Positions 531 through 31,268 of a DNA stretch of 64,000 nt are shown here, piece after piece. Position 1 is the stretch's first letter; each line of letters begins with the position of its first letter. Below the pieces are notes generated by a model that was given only the letters and a program-made list of their open reading frames with translations, ran no database searches and had not been told where the DNA came from. Origin of the DNA: Haplodiscus bocki (lineage: Eukaryota); the NCBI GenBank assembly GCA_965655095.1, contig OZ296649.1, positions 104,036,001 to 104,100,000 of the forward strand. Direction: 5' to 3'. Position numbers and translations under genes: made by a program.

Positions 531-629
531 AGCAAGATTCTCAAAAAATTGTCGCAGACTGAAGTGAACGGCCTCGAGTTCAGCTTGTCAGTAAATCTCG
601 ACAACGATTAGTCAAGTGAGCGCTGGATG

Positions 630-3766: not shown

Positions 3767-3772
3767 TACTAG
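3767..3772. repeat. 6-bp target-site duplication TACTAG, left copy (also 11643-11648)
   Basis: TACTAG immediately precedes GGTAGTAAGAGTGTGAGC at 3773 and 11649. The same hexamer follows the right terminus at 31263-31268. Confidence 0.85.
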
Positions 3773-9600: not shown

Positions 9601-12600
9601 TGATAAGTTCCGTGCAATTTGCTAGTAACCTACAAGTTGTTAATGGTCAACAAAAAGTAACCTCAAGTCTGTGCTAATGACACTTGCTATCACAAAAGTG
9701 TCACGGCGGCAAAGATGTGCTTCACAAACACTCGCAATATTCAACTGGTTTCTAGTTCACAGTTATCAAAAGAAATCCTGCGTAATGATTACAACAAAAC
9801 TAGCAAAAGCTAGCAAATCAATACATCCAAGAAGTAACAAAAGATACCCTGTCAGTAAATAGGAATTTAAAATTAAGGTTAATCCACCCGCAAACACTGG
9901 CATCTAATCATTAGATTGGGGGCACGAATTTCACGAAATATAAAACATACTTCAACAAAAAAAATTAAGCAAACGAAACAAGTAAGAACATTCGATTTCA
10001 GAAACACAAGTTGGAACAGCTCGCCATAAAAGTTAAAAATACGTACTCCCAGCTACTTATCGAGAAATCTCGACAGTGAGTAGTTGAATGATCGCTGGAT
10101 TCGCCCAATAGGACCAGTTGTCTTCAAAGAGAACAATGTAACGAACGACATGAAAACATCTTCGATTTATGAAATAAAAACTGAGATATTTTGCCAGAAT
10201 AATTCCAAATAGACAAGGCTAACAGCTGATCAGAAGTTCCAGGCACCTTGTATTTGAAACAGCACTGTAGGGACCCAAACGGGCCATTAGATATTGAGAA
10301 AAAAAATCGATCAACAGAAGTAACAACATTGTTGAGTTTCCAATAACAGTTCAAAGAATATCGTCAAAAACTTTGAAACAGTTAATCCCTGCCACTGCAA
10401 AGAGCATCTGTGTAATTAGAAATTGAAGAGGCATCCGTCGGACGCAACCCGGCCAAAAGTTTTCAAGATAGTTATTCCTTTAAAAAAGACAACTTCCATC
10501 ATTAAATTCCAGCGAAATTGAAGAGGCGTGAAATCTGTTTTCTATGACAAACTTGTTTCCAGTCGGGCAAAAAGTTATCGGGATCAATGATCATGACACT
10601 TGCTATCGCCAGTGTAACAGAGGCGAAGCTGTGTTTCACAAACACTCGCGACACAGAGAGCCAACTTCCTGTACAGAGCTATCAAAATAAATGCGCCATA
10701 ATGGTAACACCGAAACTAAGGAAAGCCAGCAAAGCTTTTAGCTTTAAACGCTGTACATTCGAAAATAACAGGAGATACCTTTTCAGTGATTAAAACGTTC
10801 CATTTTTTGTTGATCCCCGTTGATCCTCCAGGCAACAATTTCTTTGATTTAGCCATGAAACAGATACACATTCACCGGTCTATAAAAACAAAGGCATCAC
10901 GGATGCTAGGCATTAAACGTTCAAACCATAAAATGTTGAATAGTAAAGCAAAACTTGGGAAAAAACAAACTCAGCAAAAATGATGTCTAAAAACATTCAA
11001 AGCGTCTAAAATTTCGTTTGGCCAACTGGTTAATTATCGACGCAATGATTGGTCACCATTTTGAAAAAGCAGAAAAATAGACGCAAATTAAATTGACAAA
11101 TTTGAAACCATTACTATAAGTACTTGAAATTGAAAGGTAGGGAGTCACGTTAGCTCTAGCAGGCGGAAAAGTAAAAATATATGAAGGAAACTAAATAAAT
11201 AATTATCCGAGTAAGCCGGCCAGTCAGAAAGAGGTTTGCGAAAGATGCTCGAAGATGCGAAGAAAAAAGAACAGTAAACTTTATAGGCCTTAAGCCTACC
11301 GACTTAATGCCTAAAAATAGATGATATGTTATGTTACCCCCTTTCCGCAATCCAGAAAAACTTTGAAAAGGCAAGCTCCAAAAAAATTTGAGACAGCCTC
11401 CCAAGGCGAAAATCAATTTTTAATGTAACGAGCCAAAAATTTTTCTTTATACCCGCTTCAAAAACTCCGAAGCCGAACACCATGTTTTTATACTTGAGTT
11501 GCACGAATGTATAATGTCCAAAAATCCTGCGGAATTAGTTGGCAACAAAAAAAATGGAGAAAAAAATGGTATCACGTTGATGTTTTCAAAAACCCAATTT
11601 TTTCAAACACCTAGACTCTAGTCCTGCGAGCATTTCGAGACATACTAGGGTAGTAAGAGTGTGAGCTGACCTTGTAGGGGGGTGGAGGTCCCTATGTATT
11701 AGGATAGGCTATAGCGAGCCAAGAAGGGACCTCCACCCGAGCCGAGAGCTTTCGGGTGACGTAATACTCGATTCTAATTGGCTGCCGAGAGCTGAGGGTT
11801 CTCGGGTGCTCGATTCTGATTGGCTGCCGAGACGAGTCGTGTAGGTTCAATGTATCAAGATATGGAGCCAAAAGCCGAGTCATTGTATTAAGATAGGTAA
11901 TGCATGTATGAAGATAGGCAGCACATGTATTAAGATAGGGAGCCGACTCAATGTATTAAGTTGGGTAGTTCATGTATTAAGATATGGGATGCATGTATTA
12001 AGATAGGCAATAAAATTCGGTATTATATAAGCATAGGCTATAGTTCGTCTCAATGTATAAAGATATGGAATGACTCATTTTCGGCACTGTGAGACTGCTT
12101 TTTTCCGGAATCAAGGTCGATGTTTTAAGATAGGAAATGATTTTCGGTAATGTATTAAAATAAGGAGTGACATTCGGTATTGTAAAACTCTAGGTTCTAG
12201 GTTTTTCAGCGTATAAGGGAAGAGTGGGGTGTTTTACTCATTTTCGGCAATGTGGGACTACTTCTTCCTCCAAAATCATGGACATTGTATAAAGATAGGG
12301 ATTGATTTTCGGTAAAAGTTTAAGAAAAGCCGTGCCATTCAGTGATGTGCTATTATGGGCTTTAGGGTTTTGCAACCTATAAAGTTACGAAATGGGGTTT
12401 GAAGATTCACTTTCGGCAATGTGAGACCTAATTTTTTTTTCAAAGATTTGGATTTTTTTCTAAGAACGTTTCTGGCATACCTGCCGCTGAACAACGCCCT
12501 TGGGGAAAGTTTGTTATGTTTGCGGTTAAATTTTACGGTTGTGGATACTGTTGTGACCTAATACTACGAGAAAACACATTTCGGTAATGTAACGAGATAG

Positions 12601-15600
12601 GGTATATTTCGGTAATGTAAAAAGATATGGTTTAGCTCGGCAAGGTCTCAGAATAGAGTATAGTTCGACAATGTAATAGGATGGGGTATAACCTCAGTGA
12701 CGTCTGCGTAAGATTAGTTTAGCAGGAAAATCTGAAAAAAATGTAGATATTATAGCAACTTGACTGTAGCAGTGCAAAAAAAATAGTGGCGAAAAAATGT
12801 AGCAATTTTTACCCATTAAATGTCAACATATAGGCATATATCGCAAAAAAAATCTGCCTTAAAAAAGAAATACCAGTTATAAAAGAAGTTGTCAATCACT
12901 TTCCGCTACGCCTGCGGATACTATTTTGACCTAGTGCTATGTAAAAAGATTCATTTTAAGCTCGAGAAATTAGTTCGAGAGTACAATTTTTAACAGAAAC
13001 AATGTATAAACTGCAAGTTTAAATTCATGCAGACTACAAAAACGATGATTTTTCACGTCTCTGCCTATATTGTACGCCTGCAAGTACTCATTTGCTATGT
13101 CAACATATGTTTGCAACGTAATATTAACAGATTTTTGTTAACAAGAACGGGTTTGAGTGTTGTTTCTGATCCGCGCAACGCATTGAGAGACAAGTAAGGT
13201 CGTCTGATGTAACAGCTTAGGTTTTCAATTCGCTCAATGTACAATGATAATATTGTGTACTGCAACTTTTTACGTTCTGTAGAGCCGTATTTCATCAACT
13301 AGAACAAGCAATGTTCACCGTCGTACCTCTTGTCCTGATGTTTACCATGATCACTCCTGGTCCTTATACTCAAAGTAAACAAACAAAGATATTTCATGCT
13401 AAAAGTAATTTGAAGCTAAACTGTGAGAACAAATGTCATTGATAACCAAAAGTGATTGTGTAAGTATTACAAATCTCAATCATACAGTCAGACACATATG
13501 CCAAGTAGTTGACGTTTGTTCTAAAGTGCTTCAGGATTTTCATGACTATTGTTTCTTCAACATGTTTGATCTATTAGTCGTGGGAATTATTTTCAGTTTC
13601 TTCTGATTGAAAAACTACAAAAACATAGCTTTGCGTTACAGCATGACCAATAAGCAGTACTTTTGCATCGAAGAGTTCCTCAAATAACACAAAATAGTTT
13701 AAATGCTCAGCAACGTAGTCTGCATGTCTGCAAGATACCACAAAAAACTTGTGAAAGTTGAGAGATAAACTGTGTACTCAGGCTTTCTTTGCGTTTGTGT
13801 ACCCAAATCATGGAATTTGAGGACAAGCAAGCATACAAAATTTTTGAGACAGGAGTCTTAGTTTGAAAATCAAAGAACATTAAACCAAATCAAGCAATTT
13901 TTTTTACTTTGGTAGCATTATGCCTAAAGCTGAATGATAAACTCATGTGTCTTATGGCTTCTGTTAATTTGAAGACCAAATCAATACCGACAGTATACGC
14001 AGAAGGTAGGCGAAAAGTTGAGGCGACCGGCTCTAAACGCTATCAAAATACATAGTGGAACAAAATCGACTCAGATCGCACCTCCTAATACATTGACGGA
14101 TTCATACACTCTGTTTTTTGTCAAAAAATCCCAATCTTAGCTCAATTTAATGACTCGGACACCCAAATCCAAACCATACAAAATTATATTACCGAAGTGT
14201 ACCCGGTCTTAATACATTAGTGGATAGTGTACGCTTTTTTATTAAAGCCTGCTTTATTACATTGTTGAGCTATACCCAACATTTTTACATTGCTGAGCTA
14301 TACCCAATCTAAACACATTGTTGAGGTATACCCAACATTAAAACACTGCTGAGCTATACACTTCCTTAGTACATTGTCGAATTATGACCAATCTAAATAA
14401 ACTGCTGTTGGTTTTCGCGCAACGTTGTTGGCAGCCAATCAGAATCGAGTAATATGCCACCAAATAGCGCTATGAAAAATCGACATGATTAAATTAAAAA
14501 CAGACAACCTAATAACTACTTGTACTTATGTGGGCGCAAAGTTAAAACCAATGCCATAAAAGGAAATCCTGTAGATCAATCATCATGCAATAGTTTCAGC
14601 GGGCTGCATCACGAGTATGAAGTTCGTAAAACAGTTCCGTAAGTGGTTTGAAGCAAGAAGCGATCAACGTACACAGAGAAAAGCGTGGAGAGACTACAAG
14701 GTTCATTGATATTTGAAAAAAATGGACTTAACCTGTGACAGGAAGCCGCTTCCATTTATAGATAATAACCCGACCGACTTGAACCACAAAATTTGAAAGT
14801 AGTACAATATGTGTTTTTATCGGTCAAAATAGAAGAATCCGTACACTCAATGGAAGCGACAAAGATGAATGGGTAGATAAGTAGGGTTAAAATTACTTGG
14901 AGGATGCTTTGTAACTTGTTACTTGCAAGAGAAAAATTTGCAGCTTTCAGGAGAGGCACCGGAGAGTTGTCTACGAAAAGTGCAGTCAAGTTTCAACGGT
15001 CATTCGAGAAAACTAAAGAAGTAACGAGAGGTAAGTCCGGGAAATTGTTGAGAAATTGGGACACTGAGTAAAATGAATTGTCTCAGTTGAACACCTCCTC
15101 TTATGCCGTCAAACAAATGCTTATTCTAGTTTGTGTTCCACATTTTTCACAAGTAACTTTTTTGCTGCGTTAGAGGGAAGAAATTTGAGTAATAGTAGTA
15201 TAACGTAAGTTCGTGAAGTAAACATAAAATTTGTAACAACTTGAATGAACCAATGAAAAAGAAATAATGACGAAAAAATGTAGCAAGTGCCACTCATTAT
15301 TTTATACCATATATGGAAAGACCGTAAAAAAAAAACAGATCAAGCATAAAGGGAAATACCAACCGTAAGGGGAGCTCTCAATCAGTTTCTTTTGTTTTAA
15401 AAACCGACTATATACCTTTAAAAACTAGTTAAAAGGATGAAAGAGCTTGTATGTCAAAACAACTCAAGTGGAACGAGTTACGAGTTCCCCCTTTATGGTG
15501 ACACTGTCTGGGAAAATTTTTCATGCGGATTAACATCGCCAGACAGCGTGCCTGAGAAAATCAATCAAGCGGAGCAGAGTCCCCTGATAAGGCGACAGGT

Positions 15601-17616
15601 TGTCTGGAGAAATTAGTTTGAACGAATGACTGAAAAACAAAATAGTGTTAAAACTTGCATCAGGTCCCTGATAAAGGAAACACCTCCCATATATGGAAAT
15701 CGTTGTAGCTTTGACCAAAAAAGGAAAGATTTTCCATATTAAGCAGGAATGAATCGGTTAAGCTTGTATAAAAGCAGCAACTTGCCATTCTGAAAATTGA
15801 TTCTTCAAAAATCTTCCTCAACAGCAGCTCGCTTCTTCCAACTACCAACGTACCCAACCACTGGTGAAATTTCTCAACAATACCTTCCTGCGATCAGATT
15901 TCAGTGCTCAACCTTTGTCGAAATGGAATACCTTTTCCTATTACAGGAAACGATGTCTGACTGTGGTTCCATGCAAATACGAAACAACAGAAAACATTAA
16001 AAGTTTTCTGGATCTACAACTGATCTTCCAAAGGTGAAACTAATTTCCTGGAAGATATGGATACAGTAGTGCAAGAGTTGACTAAATTTGTAGACTTGTT
16101 TCATTCTACGTGACATGAACCTTGACATTCCAACAAATTCTCCAATTACTAAGAACTATCTGAAAACCACAAAACAAAATGGTTTCTCCCTACTAACATT
16201 GAGTCCAAGGAGAGTTACGGAAAACTCATCGACCACAATTGATCATGTGATACATTAAATGTGATCTCCACAAAAGCAAGATTCTCAAAAAATTGTCGCA
16301 GACTGAAGTGAACGGCCTCGAGTTCAGCTTGTCAGTAAATCTCGACAACGATTAGTCAAGTGAGCGCTGGATGCGTCTCCATCCGATTGGAAGTCTTCGA
16401 AAACAAACGACACGGAACTTTCGACCTTTCAAACGGAAGTTGAGATATTTCGAATTAGGCGTTCAAACAAGGCCATCCCGGTAACTCAACAGACAACGAA
16501 AAATCAAAAAGCACTGTTTGAACGCATTTCCACCAGTAGCTTCCAGGAAAGTCATTTCTGAAAAGAACAAATGGGAATTTTCTTCTTTCAATTTATTGAT
16601 GCATTCCCGCAAAATTACATATCATACTTTCCCACTGAATTCAAGCCAGCAATCAAGCAAGCGAGCGAAAAGTTGCTTGCAGCTTGCAAATAACGTGCAA
16701 TTTGACATTTGTTGCCAGTACAATGGAAGTACACACCGTATCTGTGTTCATGACACTTGGTATCGCAAATGTAACACAGAGCCAAAGCTTGGCTTCGCAA
16801 ACATTAGCGACAAGACGCCGACTTCCAGTAGACAATCATTAAAAAAATGCAAACTAAAGGCTTCATCAAAATTTGCGAACGTCAGCAAATCTTCAAAAAT
16901 TAAATAGCTCTACATTGAAAACAAACAGCAAATACCCTGTCAGTGACAAAAACGTTCGATTTTGGTTGATCAACGGAACAAAACTGACATTCAAACTCCG
17001 AGAAAACATTACAGTATTTACGCAGCAATTTGAAATTACTTCAAGCAAACAACACAAGTAGAAACAATGTCAATTCTCAAACATCAGACAGCTCGCGGTA
17101 AAACGTCAAAATAGACCATCCCAGCAGCAGATCAGAAGCTTCATGTAGCGAATAGTTCAATCAGCACTGGTTAGAACTAATCCGACCATTAGCCATTGGA
17201 AAAATCTACACTTAATAAACGACGCAACTAAAAACATCGTTGACTTTCAGACTAAAGTTCGGAAACTTTCGTCTAAAAAATAAAGAAAAGTTGATCCCAG
17301 TCACTAAGAAGGATATCTGCGTGACAAGATTTCCAATACGCACTGGTCGGAGAGGCAATCTGACCATTAGCTTTCAAGAAAATTATTTCTGAAAAAGTTT
17401 TCGTGTTTCGAATCTTCATGGAACTCCCGTGAAAATTGAAAAACAACTTCGCGTCGAATTCAAGCAAGAAAGTGATAAGTTCCGTGCAATTTGCTAGTAA
17501 CCTACAAGTTGTTAATGGTCAACAAAAAGTAACCTCAAGTCTGTGCTAATGACACTTGCTATCACAAAAGTGTTACGGCGGCAAAGATGTCCTTCACAAA
17601 CACTCGCAATATTCAA

Positions 17617-20600
17617 AGGGTACAGAGTGGGGTGTTTTACTCAATTTCGGCAATGTGGGACTACTTTTTCCTCCGAAATCGTGGACATTGTATTACGATA
17701 GGAATTGATTTTCGGTAAAGGTTTAAGAAAAGGTGTGCCATTCAGTGTTGAGCTATTATGGGCTTTAGGGTTTTGCAACTTATAAAGTTACGAAATGGGG
17801 TTTGAAGACTCACTTTCGGCACTGTGAGACCTAATTTTTTTTTCAAAGATTTGGAATTTTTTCTAAGAACGTTTCTGGCATACCTGCTGCTGAACAACAC
17901 CCTTGGGGAAAGTTTGTTATGCTTGCGGTTAAATTTTACGCTTGTGGATACTGTTGTGACCTAATACTACGAGAAAACACACTTCGGTAATGTAACGAGA
18001 TAGGGTATATTTCGGTAATGAAAAAGATATGGTTTAGCTCGGCAAGGTCTCAGAATAGAGTATAGTTCGACAATGTATTAGGATGGGGTACACCTCAAAG
18101 ACGTCTGCGTAATACTAGTTTAACAGAAAAATCTGAAAAAAATGTAGATATTATAGAAACTTGACTGTAGCAGTGCAAAAAAAACAGTGGCGAAAATATG
18201 TAGCAAAGTTTACCCATTAAAAGTTACCATATAGGGATATATCGCAAAAAAATCTGCTTTAAAAAAGAAATACCAGACATAAAAGAAGTTGTCAATCACT
18301 TTCTGCTACGCCTGCGGATACTGTTTTGACCTAGTGTTATGTGAAAAGATTGACTTTAAGCTCGAGAAATTAGTTTGAAAGTACAATTGTTAACAAAAAC
18401 ATTGTATAAACTGCACGTTTAAATTCATGCAGACTACAAAAACGACGATTTTTCACGTCTCTGCCTATATTGTACGCCTGCAAGTACTCATTTGCTATGT
18501 CAACAAATGTTTGCAACGTAATATTAACAGATTTTTGTTAATAAGAACGGGTTTCTGATCCGCGCAACGCATTGAGAGACAAGTAAGGTCGTCTGATAAT
18601 GTTACAGCTTGTGTTTTCAATTCGCTCGATGTACAATGATAATGTTGTATACTGTAACTTTCTACGTTCTGTTAAAGCCGTATTTCTTTAACTAGAAAAA
18701 GGAATGTTCACTGTCGTAACTCTTGTCCTGATGTTTACCATCATCTCTCTTGGTCCTTATACTCAAAGTAAACAATCAAAAATATTTCATGCTAAAAATA
18801 ACTTGAAGCTAAATTGTGAGAAAAAATGTCGTTGATAACCAAAAGTGATTGTGTAAGTGTTACAAATCTCAATCATACAGTCAGACATATATGCAATGTA
18901 GTTGACGTTTGTTCTAAAATGCTTAAGGATTTTCATGACTATTGTTTCTTCAACATGTTTGATCAATTAGTCGTGGGAATTGTTTTCAGTTTCTTCTGAT
19001 TGAAAAACTACAAAAACATAGCTTTGCGTTACAGCATGACCAATAAGCAGTACTTTTGCATCGAAGAGTTCCTCAAATAACAAAAAATAGTTTAAATGCT
19101 CAGCAACGTAGTCTGCATGTCTGCAAGATACCACAAAAAACTTGTGAAAGTTGAGAGATAAACTGTGTACTCAGGCTTTCTTTGCGTTTGTGTACCCAAA
19201 TCATGGAATTTGAGGACAAGCAAGCATACAAAATTTTTGAGACAGGAGTCTTAGTTTGAAAATCAAAGAACATTAAACCAAATCAACCAATTTTTTTTTA
19301 CTTTGGTAGCATTATGCCTAAAGCTGAATGATAAACTCATGTGTCTTATGGCTTCTGTTAATTTGAATACCAAATAATACCGACAGTATACGCAGAAGGT
19401 AGGCGAAAAGTTGAGGCGACCGGCTCTAAACGCTATCAAAATACATAGTGGAACAAAATCGACTCGGATCGCTCCTCCCAATACATTGACGGATTCATAC
19501 ATCCTGTTTTTTGTCAAAAAATCCCAATCTTAGCTCAATTTAATGACTCGGACACCCAAATCCATACCATACAAAATTATATTACCGAATTGTACCCGGT
19601 CTTAATATCTTAGTGGATAGTGTACGCTTTTTTATTAAATCCTTCTTTATTACATTGTTGAGCTATACCCAACATTTTTACATTGCTCAGCTATACCCAA
19701 TCTTATCACATTGTTAAGGTATACCCCACATTGAAACATTGCGGAGCTATACACTGCCTTAGCACATTGTCGAAATATGACCGATCTAAATATAATGCTG
19801 TCGGTTTTCGAGCAACGTTGTTAGGAGCCAATCAGAATCGAGTAATACGCCACCCAATGGCGCAATGAAAAATCGACATGACTAAATTAAAAACAGACAA
19901 CCTAATAACTTCTTGTACTTATGTGGGCGCAAAGTTAAAACCAATGCCATAAAAGGAAATCCTGTAGATCAATCATCATGCAATAGTTTCAGCGGGCTGC
20001 TTCACGAGTATGAAGTTCGTAAAACAGTTCCGTAAGGGGTTTGAAGCAAGAAGCGATCAACGTACACCGAGAAAAGCGTGGGGAGACTACATGGTTGATT
20101 GATATTTGAAAAAAATGGACTTAACCTATGACAGGAAGCCGCTTCCATTTATCGATAATAACCCGACCGACGAACCAGAAAAATTGAAAGTAGTACAATA
20201 TGTGTTTTTATCGGTCAAAATAGAAGAATCCGTACACTCAATGGAAGCGACAAAGATGAATGGGTAGATAAGTAGGGTTAAAATTACTTAAAGGACGCTT
20301 TGTAACTTGTTACTTGCAAGAGAAAAATTTCCAGCTTTCAGGAGAGGCACCTGAGAGTTGTCAACGAAAAGTGCAGTCAAGTTTCAACGGTCATTCGAGA
20401 AAACTAAAGAAGTAACGAGATGTAAGTCTGGGAAATTGAGAAATTGGGACACTGAGCAAAATGAAGTGTCTCAGTTGAACACCTCCTCTTATGCCGTCAA
20501 ACAAATGCTTATTCTAGTTTGTGTTCCACATTTTTCACAAGTAACTTTTTTGCTGCGTTAGAGGGAAGAAATTTGAGTAATAGTAGTATAACGTAAGTTC

Positions 20601-23600
20601 GTGAAGTAAACATAAAATTTGGAACAACTTGAATGAACCAATGAAAAAGAAATAATGGCGAAAAAAATGGAGCAAGTGCTACTCATTATTTTATACCATA
20701 TATGGAAAGACCGTAAAAAAAAACAGATCAAACATAAAGGGAAATACCATTCGTAAAGGGAGCTCTCAATCAGTTTCTTTTGTTTTAAAAACCGACTATA
20801 TACCTCTAAAAACTAGTTAAAAGGATAAAAGAGCTTGTATGTCAAAACAACTCAAGTGGAACGAGTTACGAGTTCCCCTTTTATGGTGACAGACTGTCTG
20901 GGAAAAATTTTCATGCGGATTAACATCGCCAGACAGCGTGCCTGAGAAAATCACTCAAGCGGAGCAGAGTCCCCTCAAGGGCGACAGGTTGTCTGGAGAA
21001 GTTAGTTTGAACAAATGACTGAAAAAAAATAGTGTTAAAACTTGCATCAGGTCCCTGATAAAGGAAACACCTCCCATATATGGAAATCGTTGTAGCTTTG
21101 ACCAAAAAAGGAAAGGTTTTCCATATAAAGCAGGAATGAATCGGTTAAGCTTGTACAAAAGCAGCAACTTGCCATTCTGAAAATTGATTCTTTAAAAATC
21201 TTCCTCAACAGCAGCAACTCGCTTCTTCCAACTACCAACGTACCCAACCACTGGTGAAATTTCTCAACAATACCTTCCTACGATCAGATTTCAGTGCTCA
21301 ACCTTTGTCGAAATGGAATAACTTTTCCTATTACAGGAAACGATGTACAACTACAATAAATCCGCCTCCTCATGATCCTACAAGGCTTGCAATTCATTGA
21401 ATTTTGCGTCTGGAAGATGATCTTATATCAAATTGTGGTCCGAATGTCAAAAAGACTGTTTCTTTTGATGACGTTGTACACTTCATTGAAGAGGAGAACA
21501 TGATGACTTATGTAGATTTTGATTGTGGCTTTACGTTCTTCCCTGAAACTCCTACAAAAGTCAGACAGATCAACCGAGAACGGGAATTACATTTCCAGAT
21601 CCTTTGAAAAACCCCAATACATTCCCAGCAACGATCAACATACTTGTTCTGTTGATGAGCAGAATAGCTCTATATCTTTCTGAACCCGTACAATTTATGG
21701 GACATGCTTCCAGCCACTCTTATGTCACTCAACCGCACTAATTTTACATACTCCATGTTCAATCAGTGCCCACAACCAACAACTCAACAACCTAGAACAG
21801 ACTCATATCCGGTGTTCTCTTCATTGCGAACGATGGAAAGTAAGAAGAAAGGATTGCGCGTCAGCTTTGCATTCTTTCAAATTACTTACCGGACGGACGA
21901 GTGAACGAAACAGTTGCTACGGTTGAAGACTTGAGTGATCTCTGGAAGCCCGGAGCAATGGATGGAATTCCACCGTTTGTGATCAACTGTAATTGTATTC
22001 AAGTGTAGCTATTTGTTTCAGTTGTTTGATTTCTATTGTTTGATGGTGCGATATTTGTTGTTTTCTGAAAATTTACTTTTTTCTTTTCTTTGATGACTTT
22101 GAGGAGTAAAAGCTCATTGACAACTTCTATGTAAGGTAACACTCCCTTAGGCAGCCGAAGCCGGAATTTATCTAAGTACATTGCAGAAGTTCGCCCTAGC
22201 GTAATACATAAATGAACGCCCTCCTCAGTCGCTACTCTCTATAACCTACTTCCGTACTTGATAAGGTCGGCCCTCTGCCTTATCAAAGGACATGACATCA
22301 TCATAAATGAGTCATCAAAACCAGACTACTTATCTCTGTACGTTGCAAACCTCATAGTCTCTAGTAGAAAAATGTTGAATACCATTCCCTATCTGATTAT
22401 ATCGATGAACACAGGGTTGACTGTCTTAATAGGTATTGTTACGTTGATCATGAAATCTTTAAATCGTAAAATTTTTAATTCAGAACATGACAAGACGAAA
22501 AAATCTTAATTCAAAATCTGACAAGACGAAAAATTTTTAATTCAAAATCATGTTTCTTACAAAAAGTTTTTCATTCAAAATCATGCTTTTTAAAAAAGAA
22601 TTTAAATTCAAATTCATGCTTTTTCAAATCGTGCTTTTTAAAATTGCCGGTAAAACGCAAAATTTGCTCTTTTTACGGGGTAAATAGAATCAAAACGTGA
22701 TTTTTTGTGAGCAAAAAAATTTTAAAAATCTGCTTTTTTAAGATAATTTTTCCTTCAAATCGTGCTTTTTTAAAATAATTTTTCCTTCAAAATCGTGCTT
22801 TTTAAAATAATTTTTTCTTCAAAATCGTGCCTTTTAAAAATATGTCTTTCTTCAAAATCATGGTTTTTAAAATATAAATTTCTTCAAAATCTGAGGCGTT
22901 GTAAAATTTTTGATTCAGAATATGACAAGACGAAAAAATTGTAATTCAAAACCTGACAAGCTTTAACTCTTTCTCCGAAAACTGATTTTTATCTTGTTTC
23001 TCAGGCTCTGACTGAATGATGATAACTTCTGTCGGCGTTAACACCAACTGAATTGAGAGAGGAGAATCAAAAGACAATGTCTGTTATAGATTTAGTCGCA
23101 CGATGTACAACTGAAAGCTGTCACACGTCAATTCGTCTCTCAATGTGTGAGGAATAGCATTAAGACAACACACAATTTTTACAAACATTACGGACAGATC
23201 TCTGTGGAGTAAAAAAATGCAGCACATCAGCAGTGTTTCTAAAATACATCTTTGTGAAAACAAAAGAGAACGCATTTTAGTTAGAATTCCATCCATTTTC
23301 TCCAATAGTTTTGTGTTAGCAACAAAGAGAGGAAGAGCGATTGAAAGAAGCTGACATCTAAACAGCATCTGCCCGATATTTGGTGCGGGAAGTTACCTAC
23401 CATAGTCTTGACACTTTTCAAAACTGACAATGCTTAATCGAAAATCGAATCTTAAGACAGGTGTGGCTCAAAACATACCTTAGATTTCCCATAAAGTACC
23501 GACCCTTAAACTCATCTTCGAAAATTGCAGAATTAAAGCATGCTTTGATGCACAAGTGTACGACCTCTCAGCTTCAAGTCTATTTCACAGTTTTTCAATG

Positions 23601-24120
23601 TCTGCAGGATCTGGATCCATACGGTATCATAAGACATCGTCGAACACAATCAGTGCGGATCGCACATCATAACACATTATCCGTCTTATACACTCTATGC
23701 ACTCGGTATTTGCGGAAAGCGTAAACTTACCTCCAGTCAAGAACTCGGGCACCCAAATCCATACCATACATTATTCTTTTGCGGAAATTTACCCTGTCTC
23801 AATACATTGGTGGGGAGTGTACGCTATCTTATTACTTTGCCGAGGTATGCGCTGTCTTATTACTCTGTTGAGCTTTACCCAACATTAATACATTGCTGAG
23901 GTATACTCTACCTCAATACTTTGCTGAGCTATACCCAATGCTAACACATTGCTGCGGTATATCCAGCCTATTACATTGCTGAGTAAATCTCAAGTTTAAT
24001 GCATTGATGAGCTATACCGAATTCTAACACTTCGTTGAGGTATATCTTGTCTTATCAAATTGCAGAGCTAATCCAAATCTTAAAACATTGCCGATGTATA
24101 CCCTGTCTTATTACATTGCT
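17617..24120 (+). repeat. Left arm of giant inverted repeat (terminal ~570 bp deleted)
   Basis: Mirror ORF pairs in the track: 19683..19868+/28359..28544- (identical peptides), 19263..19517-/28710..28943+, 22258..22509+/25848..26099-, 23084..23368-/25022..25306+. Confidence 0.96.
22460..23410. mobile_element. Interspersed repeat with AT-rich ~31-bp satellite core (Helentron/HINE-like), mirrored at ~24975-25900
   Basis: Tandem TTCAAAATC(G/A)TGCTTTTTAAAA and CTGACAAGACGAAAAATTTTTAATTCAAAA units, ending near GTTACCTACCATAGTCTTG. The class assignment is inference. Confidence 0.45.
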
Positions 24121-24610
24121 GGGTATACGTCAGCAATATTTCAAGATTGGGAACATCTCAGCAATGTAATAGGACAGGGTATACATCAGCAAGGTTTTGA
24201 GATTGGGATTAGCTCTGCAATGTTAAGACAAAATATGCCCCAGCAATGTTATAAGATTAGGAACAGCTAAGCAATGTAATAAGTCAGGGTATACATCAGC
24301 AATTTCTTAAGATTGGGAATAGCTCAGCAATTTAATAAGACAAGATATACCTCAACGAAGTGTCAGGATTCGGTATAGCTCATCGGTGCATAAAACTTGA
24401 GAATTACTCAGCAATGTAATAGGCTGGATATACCGCAGCAAAGTTTTAGCATTGGGTATAGCTCAGCAAAGTAATGAGGTAGAGTAAACCTCAGCAATAT
24501 ATTATTGTTGGGTATAGCTCAACAGAGTAATAAGGCAGCGCATACTTCAGCAAAGTAATAAGATAGCGTACAGTACCCACCAAAGTATTAAGACAGGGTA
24601 AATTTCCGCG
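23780..24610. repeat. Central minisatellite (30-bp subunits, 60-bp dimer) containing the fold-back point
   Basis: ACATTGCTGAG(C/G)TATAC units run to 24120, then reverse-complement units start at 24121. The right side carries extra units. Confidence 0.9.
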
Positions 24611-27600
24611 AAAGAATAATGTATGGTATGGATTTGGGTGCCCGAGTTCTTGACTGGAGCTAAATTTACGCTTTCCGCAAATACCGAGTGCATAGAGTGT
24701 ATAAGACGGATAATGTGTTATGATGTGCGAGCCGCGCTGATTGTGTTCGACGATGTCTCATGATACCGTATGGATCCAGATCCTGCAGACATTAATAAAC
24801 TGTGAAATAGACTTGAAGCTGAGAGGTCGTACACTTGTGCATCAAAGCATGCTTTAATTCTGCAATTTTCGAAGATGAGTTTAAGGGTCGGTAATTTATG
24901 GGAAGTCTAAGGTATGTTTTGAGCCACACCTGTCTTGAGATTCGGTTTTCGATTAAGCATTGTCAATTTTGAAAAGCGTCAAGATTATGGTAGGTAACGT
25001 CCCGCACTCAATATCGGGCAGATGATGTTTAGGTGTCAGCTTCTTTCCATCGCTCTTCCTCTCTTTGTTGCTCACACAAAACTATTGGAGAAAATGGATG
25101 GAATTCTAAGTAAAATGCGTTCTCTTTTGTTTTCACAAAGATGTATTTTGAGAAACACTGCTGATGTTCTGCATGTTATACTCCACAGAGATCTGTCCGT
25201 AATATTTGTGAAAATTGTGTGTTGTGTTAAAGCTATTCCTTACACATTGAGAGACGAATTGACGTGTGACAGCTTTCAGTTGTACATCGTGCGACTAAAT
25301 CTATAACAGACATTGTCTTTCAGTTCTCCTCTTTAAATTCAGTTGGTGTTAACGCCGACAGAAGTTATCATCATTCAGTCAGAACCTGAGAAACAAGATA
25401 AAACTCAGATTTCGGAGAGTTGAAACTTGTCAGATATCGAAACAAAATTTTTACAAGGTGGCAGATTTTGAATTAAAATTTTTTACATCGCGTCAGATTT
25501 TGCATTAAAAACTTTACAACGCGACAAATTTTGAAGAAAATTATATTTTTAAAAACCATGATTTTGAAGAAAGACATATTTTTAAAAAGCACGATTTTGA
25601 AGAAAAAAAATTTTTTAAAAAGCACGATTTCAAGGAAAAATTGTTTTAAAAAAGCAGATTTTTAAAACTTTTTTGCTCACAAAAAAACACGTTTTGATCC
25701 TATTTACCCCGTAAAAAGAGCAAATTTTTCGTTTTACGTGCAATTTTAAAAAGCACGATTTTGAAAAAGCATGAATTTGAATTTAAAATTTTTCTTAAAA
25801 AGCATAAATTTGAATGAGAAAGTTTTTGTAAGAAACATAATTTTGAATTAAAAATTTTTCGTCCTGTCATATTCTGAATTAAAAATTTTACGATTTAAAG
25901 ATTTTATGATCAACGTAACAATACCTATTAAGACAGTCAACCCTGTGTTCATCGATATACTCAGATAGGGAATGGTATTCAACAATTTTCTACTAGGAAC
26001 TATGAGGTTTGCAACGTAAGGAGATAAGTAGTCTGGTTTTAATGACTCATTTATGATGATGTCATGTCCTTTGATAAGGCAGAGAGCCGACCTAATCAAG
26101 TATGGAAGTAGGTTATAGAGTAGCGACTGAGGAGGGCGTTCATTTATGTATTACGCTAGGGCGAACTTCTGCAATGTACTAAGATAAATTCCGGCTTCGG
26201 CTGCCTAAGGGAGTGTTACCATACATAGAAATTGTCAATGAACTTTTACTCCTCACTCAAAGTCATCAAAGAAAAGAAAAAAGTAAATTTTCAGAAAACA
26301 ACAAATATCGCACCATCAAACAATAGAAATCAAACAACTGAAACAAATAGCTACACTTGAATACAATTACAGTTGATCACAAACGGTGGAATTCCATCCA
26401 TTGCTCCGGGCTTCCAGAGATCACTCAAGTCTTCAACCGTAGCAACTGTTTCGTTCACTCGTCCGTCCGGTAAGTAATTTGAAAGAATGCAAAGCTGACG
26501 CGCAATCCCTTCTTCTTACTGTCCATCGTTCGCAATGAAGAGAACACCGGATATGAGTCTCTTCTAGGTTGTTGAGTTGTTGGTTGAGGGCACTGATTGA
26601 ACATAGAGTATGTAAAATTAGTGCGGTTGAGTGACATAAGAGTTGCTGGAACCATGTCCCATAAATTGTACGGGTTCAGAAAAATGATCTGTCTGACTTT
26701 TGTAGGAGTTTCAGGGAAGAACGTAAAGGCACAATCAAAATCTACATAAGTCATCATGTTCTCCTCGTCAATGAAGTGTACAACGTCATAAAAAAACAGT
26801 CTTTTTGACATTCGGACCACAATTTGATATAAGATCATCTTTCAGACGCAAAATTGAATGAATTGCAAGCCTTGTAGGATCATAAGGAGAGAGTACGGAT
26901 TTATTGTAGTTGTACATCGTTTCCTGTAATAGGAAAAGTTATTCCACTTCGACAAAGGTTGAGCAGTGAAATCTGATCGTAGGAAGGTATTGTTGAGAAA
27001 TTTCACCAGTCGTTGGGCACGTTGGTAGTTGGAAGAAGCGAGTTGCTGCTGTCGAGGAAGATTTTTAAAGAATCAATTTTCAGAATGGCAAGTTGTTGCT
27101 TTTGTACAAGCTTAACCGATTCATTCCTGCTTTATATGGAAAACCTTTCCTTTTTTGGTCAAAGCTACAACGATTTTCATACATGGTAGGTGTTTCCTTT
27201 ATCGGGGACCTGATGCAAATTTTAACACTATTTTGTTTTTCAGTCATTTGTTCATACTAATTTCTCCAGACAACCTGCCCCGCTTGAGTGATTTTCTCAG
27301 GCACGCTGTCTGGCGATGTTAATCCGCATGAAGAATTTTCCCAGACAGTCTGTCACCATAAAAGGGGAACTCGTAACTCGTTGTTTTGACATGCAAGCTC
27401 TTTCATCCTTTTAACTAGTTTTTAAAGGTATATAGTCGGTTTTTAAAACGAAAGAAACTGATTGAGAGCTCCCCTTACCGTTGGTCTTTCGCTTGATCTG
27501 TTTTTTTTTACGGTCTTTCCATTTATGGTATAAAATAGTCAGTAGCACTGGCTACATTTTTTTTGCCATTATTTCTTTTTCATTGGTTCATTCAAGTTGT

Positions 27601-30600
27601 TACAAATTTTATGTTTACTTCACGAACTTACGTTATACTACTATTACTCAAATTTCTTCCCTCTGTCGCAGCAAAAAATTTACTTGTGAAAAATGTGGAA
27701 CACAAACTAGAATAAGCATTTGTTTGACGGCATAAGAGGAGGTGTTCAACTGAGACAATTCATTTTACCCAGTGTCCCAATTTCTCAACAATTTCCCAGA
27801 CTTACCTCTCGTTACTTCTTTAGTTCTCTCGATTGACCGTTGAAACTTGAGTGCACTTTTCGTAGACAACTCTCAGGTGCCTCTCCTGAAAGCTGCGAAT
27901 TTTTCTCTTGCAAGTAACAAGTTACAAAGCATCCTCCAAGTAATTTTAACCCTAGTTATCTACCCATTCATCTTTGTCGCTTCCATTGAGTGTATGGATT
28001 CTTTTATTTTGACCGATAAGAGCACATATTGTACTACTTTCAAATTTTCTGGTTCGTCGGTCGGGTTATTATCGATAAATGGAAGCGGCTTCCTGTCATA
28101 GGTTAAGTCCATTTTTTTCAAATATCAATCAACCATGTAGTCTCTCCACGCTTTCCTCGGTGTACGTTGATCGCTTCTTGCTTCAAACCCCTTACGGAAC
28201 TGTTTTACGAACTTCATACTCGTGAAGCAGCCCGCTGAAACTATTGCATGATGATTGATCTACAGGATTTCCTTTTATGGCATTGGTTTTAACTTTGCGC
28301 CCACATAAGTACAAGAAGTTATTAGCTTGTCTGTTTTTAATTTAGTCATGTCGATTTTTCATTGCGCCATTGGGTGGCGTATTACTCGATTCTGATTGGC
28401 TCCTAACAACGTTGCTCGAAAACCGACAGCATTATATTTAGATCGGTCATATTTCGACAATGTGCTAAGGCAGTGTATAGCTCCGCAATGTTTCAATGTG
28501 GGGTATACCTTAACAATGTGATAAGATTGGGTATAGCTGAGCAATGTAAAAATGTTGGGTATAGCTCAACAATGTAATAAAGAAGGATTTAATAAAAAAG
28601 CGTACACTATCCACTAAGATATTAAGACCGGGTACAATTCGGTAATATAATTTTGTATGGTATGGATTTGGGTGTCCGAGTCATTAAATTGAGCTAAGAT
28701 TGGGATTTTTTGACAAAAAACAGGATGTATGAATCCGTCAATGTATTGGGAGGAGCGATCCGAGTCGATTTTGTTCCACTATGTATTTTGATAGCGTTTA
28801 GAGCCGGTCGCTTCAACTTTTCGCCTACCTTCTGCGTATACTGTCGGTATTATTTGGTATTCAAATTAACAGAAGCCATAAGACACATGAGTTTATCATT
28901 CAGGTTTAGGCATAATGCTACCAAAGTAAAAAAAATTGGTTGATTTGGTTTAATGTTCTTTGATTTTCAAACTAAGACTCCTGTCTCAAAAATTTTGTAT
29001 GCTTGCTTGTCCTCAAATTCCATGATTTGGGTACACAAACGCAAAGAAAGCCTGAGTACACAGTTTATCTCTCAACTTTCACAAGTTTTTTGTGGTATCT
29101 TGCAGTCATGCAGACTACGTTGCCGAGCATTTAAACTATTTTTTGTTATTTGAGGAACTCTTCGATGCAAAAGTACTGCTTATTGGTCATGCTGTAACGC
29201 AAAGCTATGTTTTTGTAGTTTTTCAATCAGAAGAAACTGAAAACAATTCCCACGACTAATTGATCAAACATGTTGAAGAAACAATAGTCATGAAAATCCT
29301 TAAGCATTTTAGAACAAACGTCAACTACATTGCATATATGTCTGACTGTATGATTGAGATTTGTAACACTTACACAATCACTTTTGGTTATCAACGACAT
29401 ATTTTCTCACAATTTAGCTTCAAGTTATTTTTAGCATGAAATATTTTTGATTGTTTACTTTGAGTATAAGGACCAAGAGAGATGATGGTAAACATCAGGA
29501 CAAGAGTTACGCCAGTGAACATTCCTTTTTCTAGTTAAAGAAATACGGCTTTAACAGAACGTAGAAAGTTACAGTATACAACATTATCATTGTACATCGA
29601 GCGAATTGAAAACCCAAGCTTTTACAATATCAGACGACCTTACTTGTCTCTCAATGCGTTGCGCGGATCAGAAACCCGTTCTTATTAACAAAAATCTGTT
29701 AATATTACGTTGCAAACATGTGTTGACATAGCAAATGAGTACTTGCAGGCGTACAATATAGGCAGAGACGTGAAAAATCGTCGTTTTTGTAGTCTGCATG
29801 AATTTAAACGTGCAGTTTATACAATGTTTTTGTTAACAATTGTACTTTCAAACTAATTTCTCGAGCTTAAAGTCAATCTTTTCACATAACACTAGGTCAA
29901 AACAGTATCCGCAGGCGTAGCAGAAAGTGATTGACAACTTCTTTTATGTCTGGTATTTTTAAGGGAGATATTTTTTGCGATCTATCTCTATATGGTAACA
30001 TTTATTGTGTAACATTTGCTACATATTTTCGCCATTATTTTTTTTGCACTGGTACAGTCAAGTTGCTACAATATCTACATTTTTTTTCAGATTTTTCTGT
30101 CACACTAATATTGTATTCTGCAGACGTCACTGAGGTATACCCCAAACCTAATACATGGTCAAACTATACTCTATTCTGAGACAAATTGCCGAGCTCAACC
30201 ATAACTTTTTACATTACCGAAAAATACCCTATCTCGTTACATTACCGAAGTGTGTTTTCACGTAGTATTAGGTCAAAACAGTATCCACAAGCGTAAAATT
30301 TAACCGCAAACACAACATACTTTCCCCAAGGGCGTTGTTCAGCGGCAGGTATGCCAGAAACGTTCTAAGAAAAAAAACCAAATCTTTGAAAAAAAATTAG
30401 GTCTCACATTGCCGAAAGTGAGTCTTCAAACCCCATTTCGTAACTTTATAGGTTGCAAAACCCTAAAGCCCATAATAGCACATCACTGAATGGCACAGCT
30501 TTTCTTAAAATTTTACCGAAAATCAATCCCTATCTTTATACAATGTCCATGATTTTGGAGGAAAAAGTAGTCCCATATTGCCGAAAATGAGTAAAACACC

Positions 30601-31262
30601 CCACTCTGTACCTTTATACGTTGAAAAACCTGGAACCTAGAGTATTACAATACCGAATGTCACTCCTTATCTTAATACATTACCGAAAATCATTCTCTAT
30701 CTTAAAACATCGACCTTGATTCCGGAAAAAAAAACAGTCTCACAGTGCCGAAAATGAGTCATTCCATATCTTTATACATTGAGACGAACTATAGCCTATG
30801 CTTATACAATACCGAATTTTATTGCCTATCTTAATACATGCATCCCCTATCTTAATACATGAACTACCCAACTTAATACATTGAGTCGGCTCCCTATCTT
30901 AATACATGCGCTGCCTATCTTCATACATGCATTACCTATCTTAATACAATGACTCGGCTTTCGGGTCCATATCTTGATACATTGAACCGACACGACTCGT
31001 CTCGGCAGCCAATCAGAATCGAACACCCGAGAACCCTCGGCTCTCAGCAACCACTCTGAATCGAGCACCCGAGAACCCTCGGCTCCCGGCAGCCAATTAG
31101 AATTGAGTATTACGTCACCCGAGTCATCAGCCAATCAGAATCGAGCATTACGTCACCCGAGAGCTCTCGGCTCGGGTGGAGGTCCTTTCTCGGCTCGCTA
31201 TAGCCTATCCTAATACATAGGGACCTCCACCCCCTACCAGGTCAGCTCACACTCTTACTACT
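24121..31262 (-). repeat. Right arm of giant inverted repeat (~7.14 kb, complete to terminus)
   Basis: Reverse complement of 17617-24120, then of 3773-4340. Ends ...CAGCTCACACTCTTACTACT at 31262. Confidence 0.96.
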
Positions 31263-31268
31263 TACTAG
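31263..31268. repeat. 6-bp target-site duplication TACTAG, right copy
   Basis: ...CTCTTACTACT|TACTAG|CCTATAG. It is a direct, not inverted, repeat of the left hexamer. Confidence 0.85.

What the first reader, a model, noticed from the sequence alone, without database searches (positions are those of the whole stretch)
11643..31268. Giant palindromic, gene-less Polinton derivative with a clean 6-bp TSD: candidate integrated snap-back defective genome
Seen: two ~7-kb arms with no spacer, Polinton-type termini, and TACTAG as a DIRECT repeat on both sides. The right flank is not the mirror of the left flank, which argues against an in-situ inverted duplication of chromosome. Established: Polintons have AG..CT termini, TIRs of typically hundreds of bp, 6-bp TSDs and protein-primed strand-displacement replication. 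Inference: replication from one end folded back, giving a ~14-kb molecule with two copies of the same end that a helper integrase inserted in trans. That would be a defective-interfering or satellite parasite of an endogenous virus. It could also yield long hairpin RNA that silences the family.
Basis: partly seen in the sequence, partly recalled or inferred. Interest (0 to 1): 0.9.

Follow-up and report, generated by a model that had tools for sequence, protein, structure and literature searches.

The report
Palindromic Maverick-derived satellite element family
This stretch is an old, decayed and locally rearranged copy of a very abundant family of mirror-image mobile elements that use the ends of Maverick/Polinton virus-like elements, so the palindrome is an inherited family design and not a one-off replication accident at this site.

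Summary
The core observation holds. An element at 11649-31262 ends in inverted Maverick-type termini, 5'-(AGT)2...(ACT)2-3', and is flanked by a direct TACTAG duplication. Its inner ~13 kb is a palindrome that turns around in a 28/56-bp tandem array near 24120-24270.

Three parts of the description are wrong:
- The left side is not one 7-kb arm. It is a 12.5-kb composite of a partial arm, a 1.66-kb captured copy of flank, and a second partial arm.
- The left end lies inside a recent 7.9-kb tandem duplication, so it has a twin at 3773.
- The arms are not gene-less in origin. Each holds a pseudogene of a 222-aa gene that is intact and under purifying selection in other copies.

The palindrome is a family trait. 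All 7 sampled copies whose contigs reach the centre turn around in the same array, at different loci, 11-18% apart. One other copy has its own 6-bp duplication. The terminal ~720 bp, including a hairpin kept by compensatory changes, is shared with a copy that encodes a protein-primed DNA polymerase.

Best reading: a non-autonomous, palindromic Maverick satellite family. A snap-back could explain only the family's origin, not this insertion.

The parts
1..212 (+). Tail of a further upstream partial arm copy (arm positions ~4140-4350). It shows that the tandem array continues to the left of the window.
213..1868 (.). Y2: non-element segment, unit 1 of the tandem array.
   Evidence: 0.12% from Y3
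1869..3766 (.). Z2: non-element flank segment, unit 1 of the tandem array.
   Evidence: 0.11% from Z3
3767..3772 (+). Twin copy of the left TACTAG, duplicated along with the flank.
3773..8087 (+). A0: twin of the outer 4.35 kb of the left arm (terminus to arm position ~4350), produced by the recent 7.9-kb tandem duplication.
   Evidence: 0.26% from A
8088..9744 (.). Y3: flank segment, the source sequence of the captured piece Y4.
9745..11642 (.). Z3: left flank immediately next to the insertion.
   Evidence: no match in other sampled loci
11643..11648 (+). Left target-site duplication, TACTAG.
11649..15956 (+). A: outer part of the left arm (terminus to arm position ~4350). It breaks off cleanly into Y4.
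11681..11737 (+). Left terminal hairpin: 12-bp stem (12/12 pairs) and 33-nt loop holding the family motif.
11695..12300 (+). Left subterminal array: about 12 same-orientation copies of the TGTATTAAGATAGG-like motif, plus 42-bp repeats.
15957..17616 (.). Y4: a 1.66-kb copy of flank segment Y3 captured inside the left arm at the A/B junction.
   Evidence: 2.24% from Y3
17616..24120 (+). B: inner left arm (arm positions ~650-7000), the true mirror partner of the right arm.
21368..21999 (+). Pseudogene of the family's 222-aa gene in arm B: 2 pieces in 2 reading frames (at least one frameshift) and 5 in-frame stops.
24121..24269 (.). Centre: 28/56-bp tandem array in which the orientation of the units flips.
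24270..31262 (-). R: complete right arm, from the centre to the terminus.
   Evidence: L002 and L013 carry the same arm
26360..26917 (-). Pseudogene of the 222-aa gene in arm R: 3 pieces in 2 frames (at least one frameshift), no stops inside the pieces, about 108 nt shorter than the intact gene. The longest ORF left is 127 aa.
30529..31217 (-). Right subterminal motif array with 42-bp repeats.
31175..31231 (-). Right terminal hairpin: 11/12 pairs. Folded as DNA, -20.5 kcal/mol, z = -2.85.
31263..31268 (+). Right target-site duplication, TACTAG.

Best explanation
The feature is one old insertion of a member of a large family of non-autonomous elements derived from Maverick/Polinton virus-like elements of an animal host. 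SHOWN. (i) The family's ends are Maverick ends. They carry the (AGT)2//(ACT)2 motif and a 6-bp target duplication. Their ~720-bp terminal region, with a G-run, a hairpin kept by compensatory changes and an array of short motifs, is shared with a copy that encodes a protein-primed family-B polymerase. (ii) The family's normal architecture is a near-complete palindrome of about 14-16 kb. Two arms of 7-8 kb meet in a 28/56-bp tandem array. Each arm carries one 222-aa gene that reads inward and is under purifying selection. (iii) In this copy both gene copies are pseudogenes and the left arm has been rebuilt in place. There was an older partial duplication that captured 1.66 kb of the adjoining flank, then a recent 7.9-kb tandem duplication of flank plus left end. 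(iv) The two arms of a copy stay more alike than orthologous arms on the two contigs that share this insertion, so arm-to-arm copying goes on in the chromosome. INFERRED. The element has no polymerase or integrase, so it must be copied and inserted by proteins from coding Mavericks that recognise the shared ends. Having the same end twice gives it two identical origins and two identical integrase sites. The palindromic founder may have arisen by a strand switch (snap-back) during protein-primed replication, or by an inverted duplication in a master copy. The total size, about that of a Maverick genome, may reflect a packaging-size constraint. The role of the 222-aa protein is unknown. My guess is a factor that favours the satellite's own propagation.
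For: Termini, TSD and their uniqueness. A second independent TSD (ACCCTC) flanks the 11.2-kb copy L008. The end-motif and 6-bp TSD are defining Maverick features: PMC8097293 and PMC8969392. Shared termini with a polymerase-bearing copy: arm positions 1-530 match L004 1785-1222 at 67% over 624 columns, E 7e-69, with the alignment. That copy's ORF has 3,093 relatives. Its profile finds 8,935 proteins, and the closest full-length ones score 46.9 and 38.6 bits on PF03175 against a cut-off of 25.8. P0252 shows the family-B motif stretches in order. Hairpin covariation: 10-12 of 12 pairs within each copy, 7 different stems, and a between-lineage mean of 8.6. Palindrome in 7 of 7 copies that reach the centre. 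Family size of at least 860 ORF variants. Selection on the gene: same length and no indels in 5 independent copies, dN/dS 0.26-0.66 against ~1-2 out of frame, and the gene region is the best-conserved part of the arm. Recent mobility: L006 and L007 are 1.6% apart at different sites. Arm relationships and concerted evolution; flank 1.12% against arm 4.34% between the two contigs. Local rearrangements. Host is an animal.
Against: I did not look at any full coding Maverick with these ends, because fetching them was barred. An integrase partner, the length of the partner's own inverted repeats, and any homology between the arm interior and Maverick interiors are therefore untested. Only this window shows a complete palindrome with both termini and a TSD together. 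In the other palindromic copies the far end lay outside the fetched DNA (L005, L010) or the flanks were mirrored (L003, L009). All relatives come from one assembly (ERZ26859043), and palindromes are hard to assemble. L009/L011 looks partly like an assembly fold-back, and three contigs end just before the centre. The 222-aa protein has no detectable relatives of known function, and its fold prediction failed. The most divergent copy, L008, is not a full palindrome, so the ancestral state is ambiguous.
Confidence: 0.7

Rival explanations
1. Recurrent in-situ palindrome formation. The mobile unit is a shorter element with moderate inverted repeats (like L008, with 2.4-kb repeats). After insertion, the chromosome repeatedly extends the repeats into full palindromes by template switching or break-induced copying that turns around in the internal tandem array.
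For: In L003 the mirror symmetry runs 665 bp past both termini into the flanks, with no TSD, inside a 109-kb contig. In L009/L011 it runs at least 4 kb into the flank. The arms of one copy are always each other's closest relatives, even where the insertion is shared between two contigs. The window's left arm holds templated flank DNA (Y4) and clean duplication junctions. L008, the deepest branch, is not a full palindrome.
Against: Five lineages at different loci would each have had to reach the same architecture with the same centre. L008 is more simply a deletion between the two direct 28-bp arrays of one arm. In the window both outer ends are true termini with a TSD and unrelated flanks. Arm similarity is equally explained by arm-to-arm conversion in an inherited palindrome.
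Confidence: 0.13
2. One reading: a one-off snap-back defective genome, made from a coding Polinton by fold-back replication and inserted once at this site.
For: The palindrome, the Maverick-type ends, the 6-bp TSD and the unrelated flanks. Snap-back genomes are defined as fully palindromic products of reverse-complementary copying (PMC13506859).
Against: The same palindrome is present in 7 of 7 sampled relatives at other loci, 11-18% diverged. The family has at least 860 ORF variants. The arm interior carries its own selected gene and does not match the polymerase region next to the shared terminus.
Confidence: 0.04
3. Assembly artefact: the palindrome, or at least the left-hand tandem structure, was created by the assembler or by chimeric fold-back reads.
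For: Palindromes and 7.9-kb near-identical tandem units (0.1-0.3% apart) are hard to assemble. L009/L011 mirrors at 99.9% up to a contig end. Several contigs end just short of the centre. The window and L002 disagree about the far arm.
Against: The arms differ by 3.3-6% with many indels, so they are two separate sequences. The flanks differ. Two contigs agree on the flank, TSD, near arm and a turn-around in the array. The ENA contig and the scaffolded window agree to within 3 bases over 20.4 kb. This rival applies mainly to the copy number of the 7.9-kb unit.
Confidence: 0.06
4. A Foldback-type cut-and-paste transposon unrelated to Mavericks.
For: Very long inverted arms with little between them, internal short tandem repeats, subterminal motif arrays, and a tendency to cause local rearrangements.
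Against: The TSD is 6 bp and the ends are (AGT)2//(ACT)2. The ends are shared with a polymerase-bearing copy. The arms are mostly unique sequence, not tandem repeats.
Confidence: 0.03

Closest known systems
Maverick/Polinton virus-like elements (vertebrate-type, (AGT)2 end-motif)
   Same: 6-bp target duplication, 5'-(AGT)2//(ACT)2-3' ends and terminal inverted repeats. The terminal region is homologous to that of a copy encoding a PF03175 protein-primed polymerase. The overall size of intact relatives (about 15-16 kb) lies inside the reported 12.7-24.6 kb range (PMC8097293).
   Different: None of the core genes is present. The inverted repeats are the whole arms (7-8 kb) rather than 46-1,447 bp. 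There is one small unrelated gene per arm, and the copy number is very high.
Snap-back / copy-back defective viral genomes, including adenovirus defective genomes with long inverted repetitions (Daniell 1976; content from my own knowledge, the paper is only cited in PMC12090768)
   Same: A palindromic molecule carrying the same genome end twice, dependent on a helper, in a protein-primed replication system.
   Different: Here the palindrome is a heritable, integrated, transposing lineage with its own selected gene and hundreds of copies. It is not a transient by-product, and most of its sequence is not shown to derive from the helper.
Non-autonomous DNA transposons (MITE-like or internally replaced derivatives)
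   Same: They keep only the cis-acting ends of an autonomous partner, have an unrelated interior, and amplify to higher copy number than the partner.
   Different: The partner is a self-replicating virus-like element. The derivative is 14-16 kb, fully palindromic and coding.
Foldback (FB) elements
   Same: Very long inverted arms, internal short tandem repeats and associated local rearrangements.
   Different: TSD length, end sequence, mostly unique arms, and the link to a polymerase-bearing element.
Large genomic palindromes with arm-to-arm gene conversion (e.g. sex-chromosome palindromes; my own knowledge)
   Same: The arms of one palindrome stay more alike than orthologous arms in diverged haplotypes.
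   Different: Those are chromosomal gene amplicons and not mobile elements.

Membership tests
Maverick/Polinton | 6-bp target-site duplication | tested here: met
   TACTAG at 11643-11648 and 31263-31268. ACCCTC on both sides of L008.
Maverick/Polinton | Conserved end-motif 5'-(AGT)2//(ACT)2-3' or (AG)3//(CT)3 (PMC8097293) | tested here: met
   9 of the 10 aligned termini start AGTAGT. The window's left end has G at base 1.
Maverick/Polinton | Terminal inverted repeats of tens to ~1,400 bp | tested here: inconclusive
   Inverted repeats are present, but they span the whole 7-8 kb arms, far outside the reported range.
Maverick/Polinton | [quoted passage not shown] | tested here: not met
   No polymerase remnant in the window by tblastn and no long ORFs. 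The polymerase is present only in a relative that shares the termini.
Maverick/Polinton | Encodes a retroviral-type integrase, packaging ATPase, protease and capsid proteins | tested here: not met
   No such ORFs or Pfam hits in the element. Their presence in the partner was not tested, because I did not fetch it.
Non-autonomous derivative of a Maverick | Shares cis-acting termini with a coding element of the same genome | tested here: met
   Arm positions 1-530 against L004 1785-1222, E 7e-69. The hairpin is conserved with compensatory changes. Only one end of one coding copy was seen.
Non-autonomous derivative of a Maverick | Many copies at unrelated sites, each with its own flanks and TSD | tested here: met
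   Eight different flanks at nine loci, two TSDs verified, at least 860 ORF variants, and L006/L007 1.6% apart at different sites.
One-off snap-back defective genome | Palindrome unique to this insertion and made of the parent's own sequence | tested here: not met
   The palindrome is shared by 7 of 7 relatives. The interior does not match the polymerase region next to the shared end.
Foldback elements | Arms built largely of short tandem repeats; TSD longer than 6 bp (my own knowledge) | tested here: not met
   Tandem arrays cover only small parts of the arms, and the TSD is 6 bp.
In-situ inverted chromosomal duplication | Mirror symmetry continues into the flanking DNA | tested here: not met
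   The window's flanks are unrelated. The feature is met in relatives L003 (665 bp) and L009 (at least 4 kb).

The most novel reading that the evidence does not exclude
The family is a true satellite of Mavericks that propagates as a palindromic genome. Its two identical ends serve as twin protein-primed origins and integrase sites. The displaced single strand folds back on itself, so each replication cycle renews arm identity. Doubling a 7-8 kb unit brings the genome to the helper's packageable size (about 15 kb). The conserved 222-aa protein is the satellite's own factor for exploiting the helper. That would make it the first described satellite lineage of an animal Maverick.
Probability: 0.2. 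Interest if true: 0.85.

Novelty: new variant of a known kind. Interest (0 to 1): 0.62.

Why it matters
Mavericks/Polintons are now regarded as integrating viruses of animals, yet almost nothing is known about parasites that exploit them. In the literature I could search, non-autonomous derivatives are barely described. This genome holds a high-copy lineage that keeps only the Maverick ends, is palindromic over its whole length, and carries its own selected gene. That gives a concrete system for asking several questions:
- Which end features matter? The (AGT)2 motif, the G-run and the covarying hairpin are candidates.
- Is genome size constrained by packaging?
- How are large palindromes kept homogeneous and how do they destabilise their surroundings? 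Here they show captured flank, tandem arrays and mirrored flanks.

It is also a practical warning for annotation and assembly. These elements break contigs and can create fold-back artefacts.

Tried and rejected
- Rfam scan of the whole window found nothing.
- Pfam on every ORF of 90 aa or more in the element, and on the 222-aa family, gave no hits. PDB sequence searches with the 222-aa protein and with the polymerase profile gave no hits. PHROGs gave no hits.
- AlphaFold models of the 222-aa protein and of a polymerase piece had pLDDT of about 30, because the alignments were too shallow. I therefore ran no fold searches.
- I tested whether CpG decay explains why arms diverge faster than flanks, and rejected it. 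CpG-context changes are ~10% of substitutions in both, and ts/tv is ~1.0 in arms against 1.6 in flank.
- The empty-site test failed to find an allele without the insertion. The flank ORF is found only on the window's own contig. The third contig with the same MINDY exon shares just 1.4 kb and is a paralogous fragment.
- Extent of the tandem array to the left: the Y-segment ORF is not on record.
- Host species: cluster look-ups gave no names, and the assembly accession appears in no paper. I know only that the host is an animal.
- A '234-aa gene' called on the contig over the R-arm remnant contains stops under the standard code. It is a gene-calling quirk and I ignored it.
- Daniell 1976 could not be read.
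- I ran no pattern scans of the viral, metagenome or prokaryote collections with the terminus. The prokaryote set is irrelevant, the JGI set does not hold this assembly, and a hit in the viral set would have meant fetching a virus of an animal.

- I glanced at a consensus line that an alignment tool printed.
- I worked out from BLAST block ends roughly where one length difference in the R-arm gene remnant lies.

None of these is used or given in this report. The polymerase assignment rests on the Pfam scores and on the natural sequence P0252.

Full report
WHAT IS IN THE WINDOW

I take the reverse complement of the right arm as the reference arm, with position 1 at window 31262. The layout is then as follows.
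- 1-212: tail of an earlier partial arm.
- 213-1868: Y2. 1869-3766: Z2.
- 3767-3772: TACTAG.
- 3773-8087: A0, arm positions 1-4350.
- 8088-9744: Y3. 9745-11642: Z3.
- 11643-11648: TACTAG.
- 11649-15956: A, arm positions 1-4350.
- 15957-17616: Y4.
- 17616-24120: B, arm positions ~650-7000.
- 24121-24269: centre.
- 24270-31262: R, the complete arm, inverted.
- 31263-31268: TACTAG, followed by an unrelated flank.

All junctions are clean. No other copy of the element lies in 31269-64000. That region holds a MINDY-3/4 exon and a LINE, so this is a eukaryotic chromosome. An exon of ribosomal protein L4 from the same assembly scores best against animal ribosomes.

THE OBSERVATION

The direct TACTAG repeat abuts both ends. 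The 22-nt terminal core occurs three times in the window against none expected. The right end begins AG and the left begins GG. The arms are truly separate sequences. B and R differ by 3.3% over arm positions 654-4355 and by 6.05% nearer the centre, with many indels.

The centre is a 28/56-bp tandem array whose units change orientation within about 40 nt. BLAST shows a 149-nt gap only because of repeat register. The stated extent, 'no spacer' and 'gene-less' all need correction.

LOCAL HISTORY

There are three layers of duplication.
- The units Y2-Z2-A0 and Y3-Z3-A differ by only 0.1-0.3%. This is a recent 7,875-bp tandem duplication that includes the left terminus and its TACTAG, and it continues beyond the window's left edge.
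- Y4 is a 2.2%-diverged copy of flank segment Y3, sitting between A and B, which are themselves 4.6% apart. So an older event duplicated part of the left arm and captured flank DNA at the junction.
- B and R form the palindrome.

Y and Z match nothing in the other sampled loci, which fits with them being host flank.

THE ARMS ARE NOT GENE-LESS IN ORIGIN

The longest ORF in arm R (127 aa) has 860 relatives at 52-68% identity, many of them exactly 222 aa long. In five independent copies the gene is intact, has the same length and shows no indels. dN/dS is 0.26-0.66, against about 1-2 for the other two frames. It is also the best-conserved part of the arm, at 89-91% identity against 62-85% elsewhere. 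It reads from the terminus side toward the centre.

In the window both copies are pseudogenes.
- Arm B: two pieces in two frames with five stops.
- Arm R: three pieces in two frames with no stops, about 108 nt short.
- A and A0 end before the gene.

The protein has no Pfam, PDB or PHROG relative, and its fold prediction failed.

THE PALINDROME IS A FAMILY TRAIT

Looking up relatives of that ORF gave nine further loci, all from ENA assembly ERZ26859043.
- L013 is the window's own contig.
- L002 is a second contig with the same flank (1.12% diverged), the same TACTAG, the same near arm and a turn-around in the same array. It is a haplotype or a recent duplicate.
- L003/L004, L005, L009/L011 and L010 are other loci, 11-18% diverged from the window. 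Each has two inverted arms meeting in the same array.
- L008 has one full arm and only the outer 2.4 kb of the second. This is most simply a deletion between the two direct 28-bp arrays of an arm. It is flanked by its own 6-bp duplication, ACCCTC.
- The contigs of L006, L007 and L012 stop before the centre.

Every copy that reaches the centre (7 of 7) is therefore palindromic there. L006 and L007 are 1.6% apart at different sites, which indicates recent transposition. Complete relatives measure 15.1 kb (L003), and about 15-16 kb by symmetry (L005, L009).

LINK TO MAVERICKS/POLINTONS

All termini begin AGTAGT, each with different flanks. PMC8097293 reports 5'-(AGT)2//(ACT)2-3' as the commonest end-motif of vertebrate Mavericks. 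It also reports perfect 6-bp duplications, inverted repeats of 46-1,447 bp, and sizes of 12.7-24.6 kb (mean 16.9 kb) that look constrained. It assigns the end repeats to the jumping-back step of protein-primed replication. PMC8969392 likewise gives long inverted repeats and 6-bp duplications as the class features.

In L004, 3.5 kb from the L003 palindrome, lies the end of a third element. Its first ~530 nt align to the arm's terminal region (67%, E 7e-69). There a 745-aa ORF reads outward and stops about 716 nt from the end. That ORF has no counterpart in the window. It has 3,093 relatives. Two relatives give sub-threshold PF03175 hits. A profile built from them finds 8,935 proteins, and the closest full-length ones pass PF03175 at 46.9 and 38.6 bits against a cut-off of 25.8. 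The natural sequence P0252 shows the stretches SQLYPYS, KPLANSPYG, MDTDS and KTY in that order. From my own knowledge I recognise these as the family-B polymerase motifs.

The family therefore shares its non-coding ends with polymerase-bearing Mavericks but not their genes. Because the host is an animal, I did not fetch any polymerase-bearing locus. The 1.8 kb in L004 came in incidentally.

A CONSERVED TERMINAL HAIRPIN

Thirty to forty nucleotides inside each end, a 12-nt stem encloses a 33-51-nt loop that carries the TGTATTAAGATAGG-type motif. Across ten termini there are seven different stem sequences. Each pairs 10-12 of 12 positions with its own partner, but only 8.6 on average with the partner from another lineage. 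The polymerase-bearing copy follows the same rule. Folded as DNA, the window's right end gives -20.5 kcal/mol, z = -2.85. About a dozen copies of the same motif follow in one orientation in the first ~750 nt. I read these as cis-acting sites. That is an inference.

ARM DYNAMICS

In a tree of an arm segment, the two arms of a copy are always sisters: window 3.5%, L002 2.3%, L003 1.4%, L005 4.4%. The window's R arm is closer to the window's B arm than to its orthologue in L002 (5.0%), although the insertion is shared. So copying between arms continues in the chromosome.

In L003 the mirror symmetry runs 665 bp past both termini, with no duplication, in the middle of a 109-kb contig. That mirrored flank is 0.9% diverged while the arms are 2.6% diverged. 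In L009/L011 the outer 7.7 kb, including 4 kb of flank, mirrors at 99.9% up to a contig end. That may be an assembly fold-back. The far arm of L002 is rearranged differently from the window's.

These palindromes are clearly unstable, hard to assemble, or both.

INTERPRETATION

- The insertion was made by an integrase acting on two Maverick ends. This is shown by the TSD and the end-motif.
- The element cannot supply polymerase or integrase, as shown by the absence of those genes. It therefore depends on coding Mavericks. This is an inference.
- The palindrome was inherited from a palindromic master, as shown by its distribution in the family. It was not made at this locus.
- How the first palindrome arose cannot be decided from these data. 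It could have been a strand switch during protein-primed replication, as in snap-back genomes (definition in PMC13506859), or an inverted duplication in a master copy.
- The match between element size and Maverick genome size is suggestive of a packaging constraint. That is only an inference.

UNRESOLVED

- The partner's integrase, and both of its ends.
- Whether the arm interior derives from a Maverick.
- The function of the 222-aa protein.
- The true copy number of the 7.9-kb unit.
- Why arms differ with ts/tv of about 1 and diverge 3-4 times faster than adjoining unique DNA.
- Why Y3/Y4 (2.2%) look older than the split of the two contigs (1.1%), although L002 lacks Y within 8 kb of its centre.

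Noticed in passing
window 40876-44208 (+): A non-LTR retrotransposon with three ORFs: PHD finger, endonuclease/exonuclease/phosphatase, and reverse transcriptase. A 96%-identical copy lies on another contig (L001), and hundreds of relatives exist.
   Followed up: partly
window 34119-34586 (-): An exon of a MINDY-3/4 deubiquitinase gene lies 2.9 kb from the element's right end. A 1.4-kb copy of this exon region (window 33572-34981, 98.8%) sits on a third contig (L014), next to MATH/TRAF-like and 'Monjiviricetes_fusion' glycoprotein-like ORFs.
   Followed up: partly
window 54629-54874: A 246-bp perfect-register self-inverted repeat (89%), seemingly a small hairpin or MITE-like element unrelated to the finding.
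   Followed up: no
window 52289-52488: A run of 200 N. The ENA contig that matches the window ends about 450 bp before it, so the window comes from a scaffolded version of the same assembly. I left it untouched.
   Followed up: partly
L009 1-7729 / L011 1664-9391: The outer arm plus 4 kb of host flank (CAF1C/RbAp48-like exons) is mirrored at 99.91% up to the contig end, while the inner arms are 96.2% identical. This is either an assembly fold-back or a very recent in-situ inverted duplication. L011 also shows a tandem duplicate of the CAF1C-like exons.
   Followed up: partly
window arms against flank; L003 arms against mirrored flank: Element DNA diverges 3-4 times faster than adjoining unique DNA of the same age (4.3% against 1.1%, and 2.6% against 0.9%). 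Its ts/tv is about 1.0 against 1.6, with no CpG excess. Ectopic conversion among family copies or error-prone copying are possible causes.
   Followed up: partly
L013 15434-16138 and 7731-8234; L013 1-1441: Gene calls on the ENA contigs include products that read through standard stop codons, so the caller seems to have used an alternative genetic code on this animal DNA. Protein lengths in that collection should be treated with care.
   Followed up: no
L004 1-1785: A polymerase-bearing Maverick end lies only 3.5 kb from the L003 palindrome, hinting that these elements cluster. The polymerase relatives carry a ~290-residue cysteine/histidine-rich insert between the first two polymerase motif stretches, and some full-length relatives start with C2H2 zinc fingers.
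   Followed up: no
window 15956/15957 and gene start near arm position ~4345: The breakpoint where partial arm copies A and A0 give way to Y lies within about 10 nt of where the 222-aa gene begins in intact relatives. This may be a coincidence or a fragile site.
   Followed up: no
L010 1990-2493: An LTR-retrotransposon RNase H fragment (RT_RNaseH) lies in the flank of another family copy. The region is rich in mobile elements.
   Followed up: no
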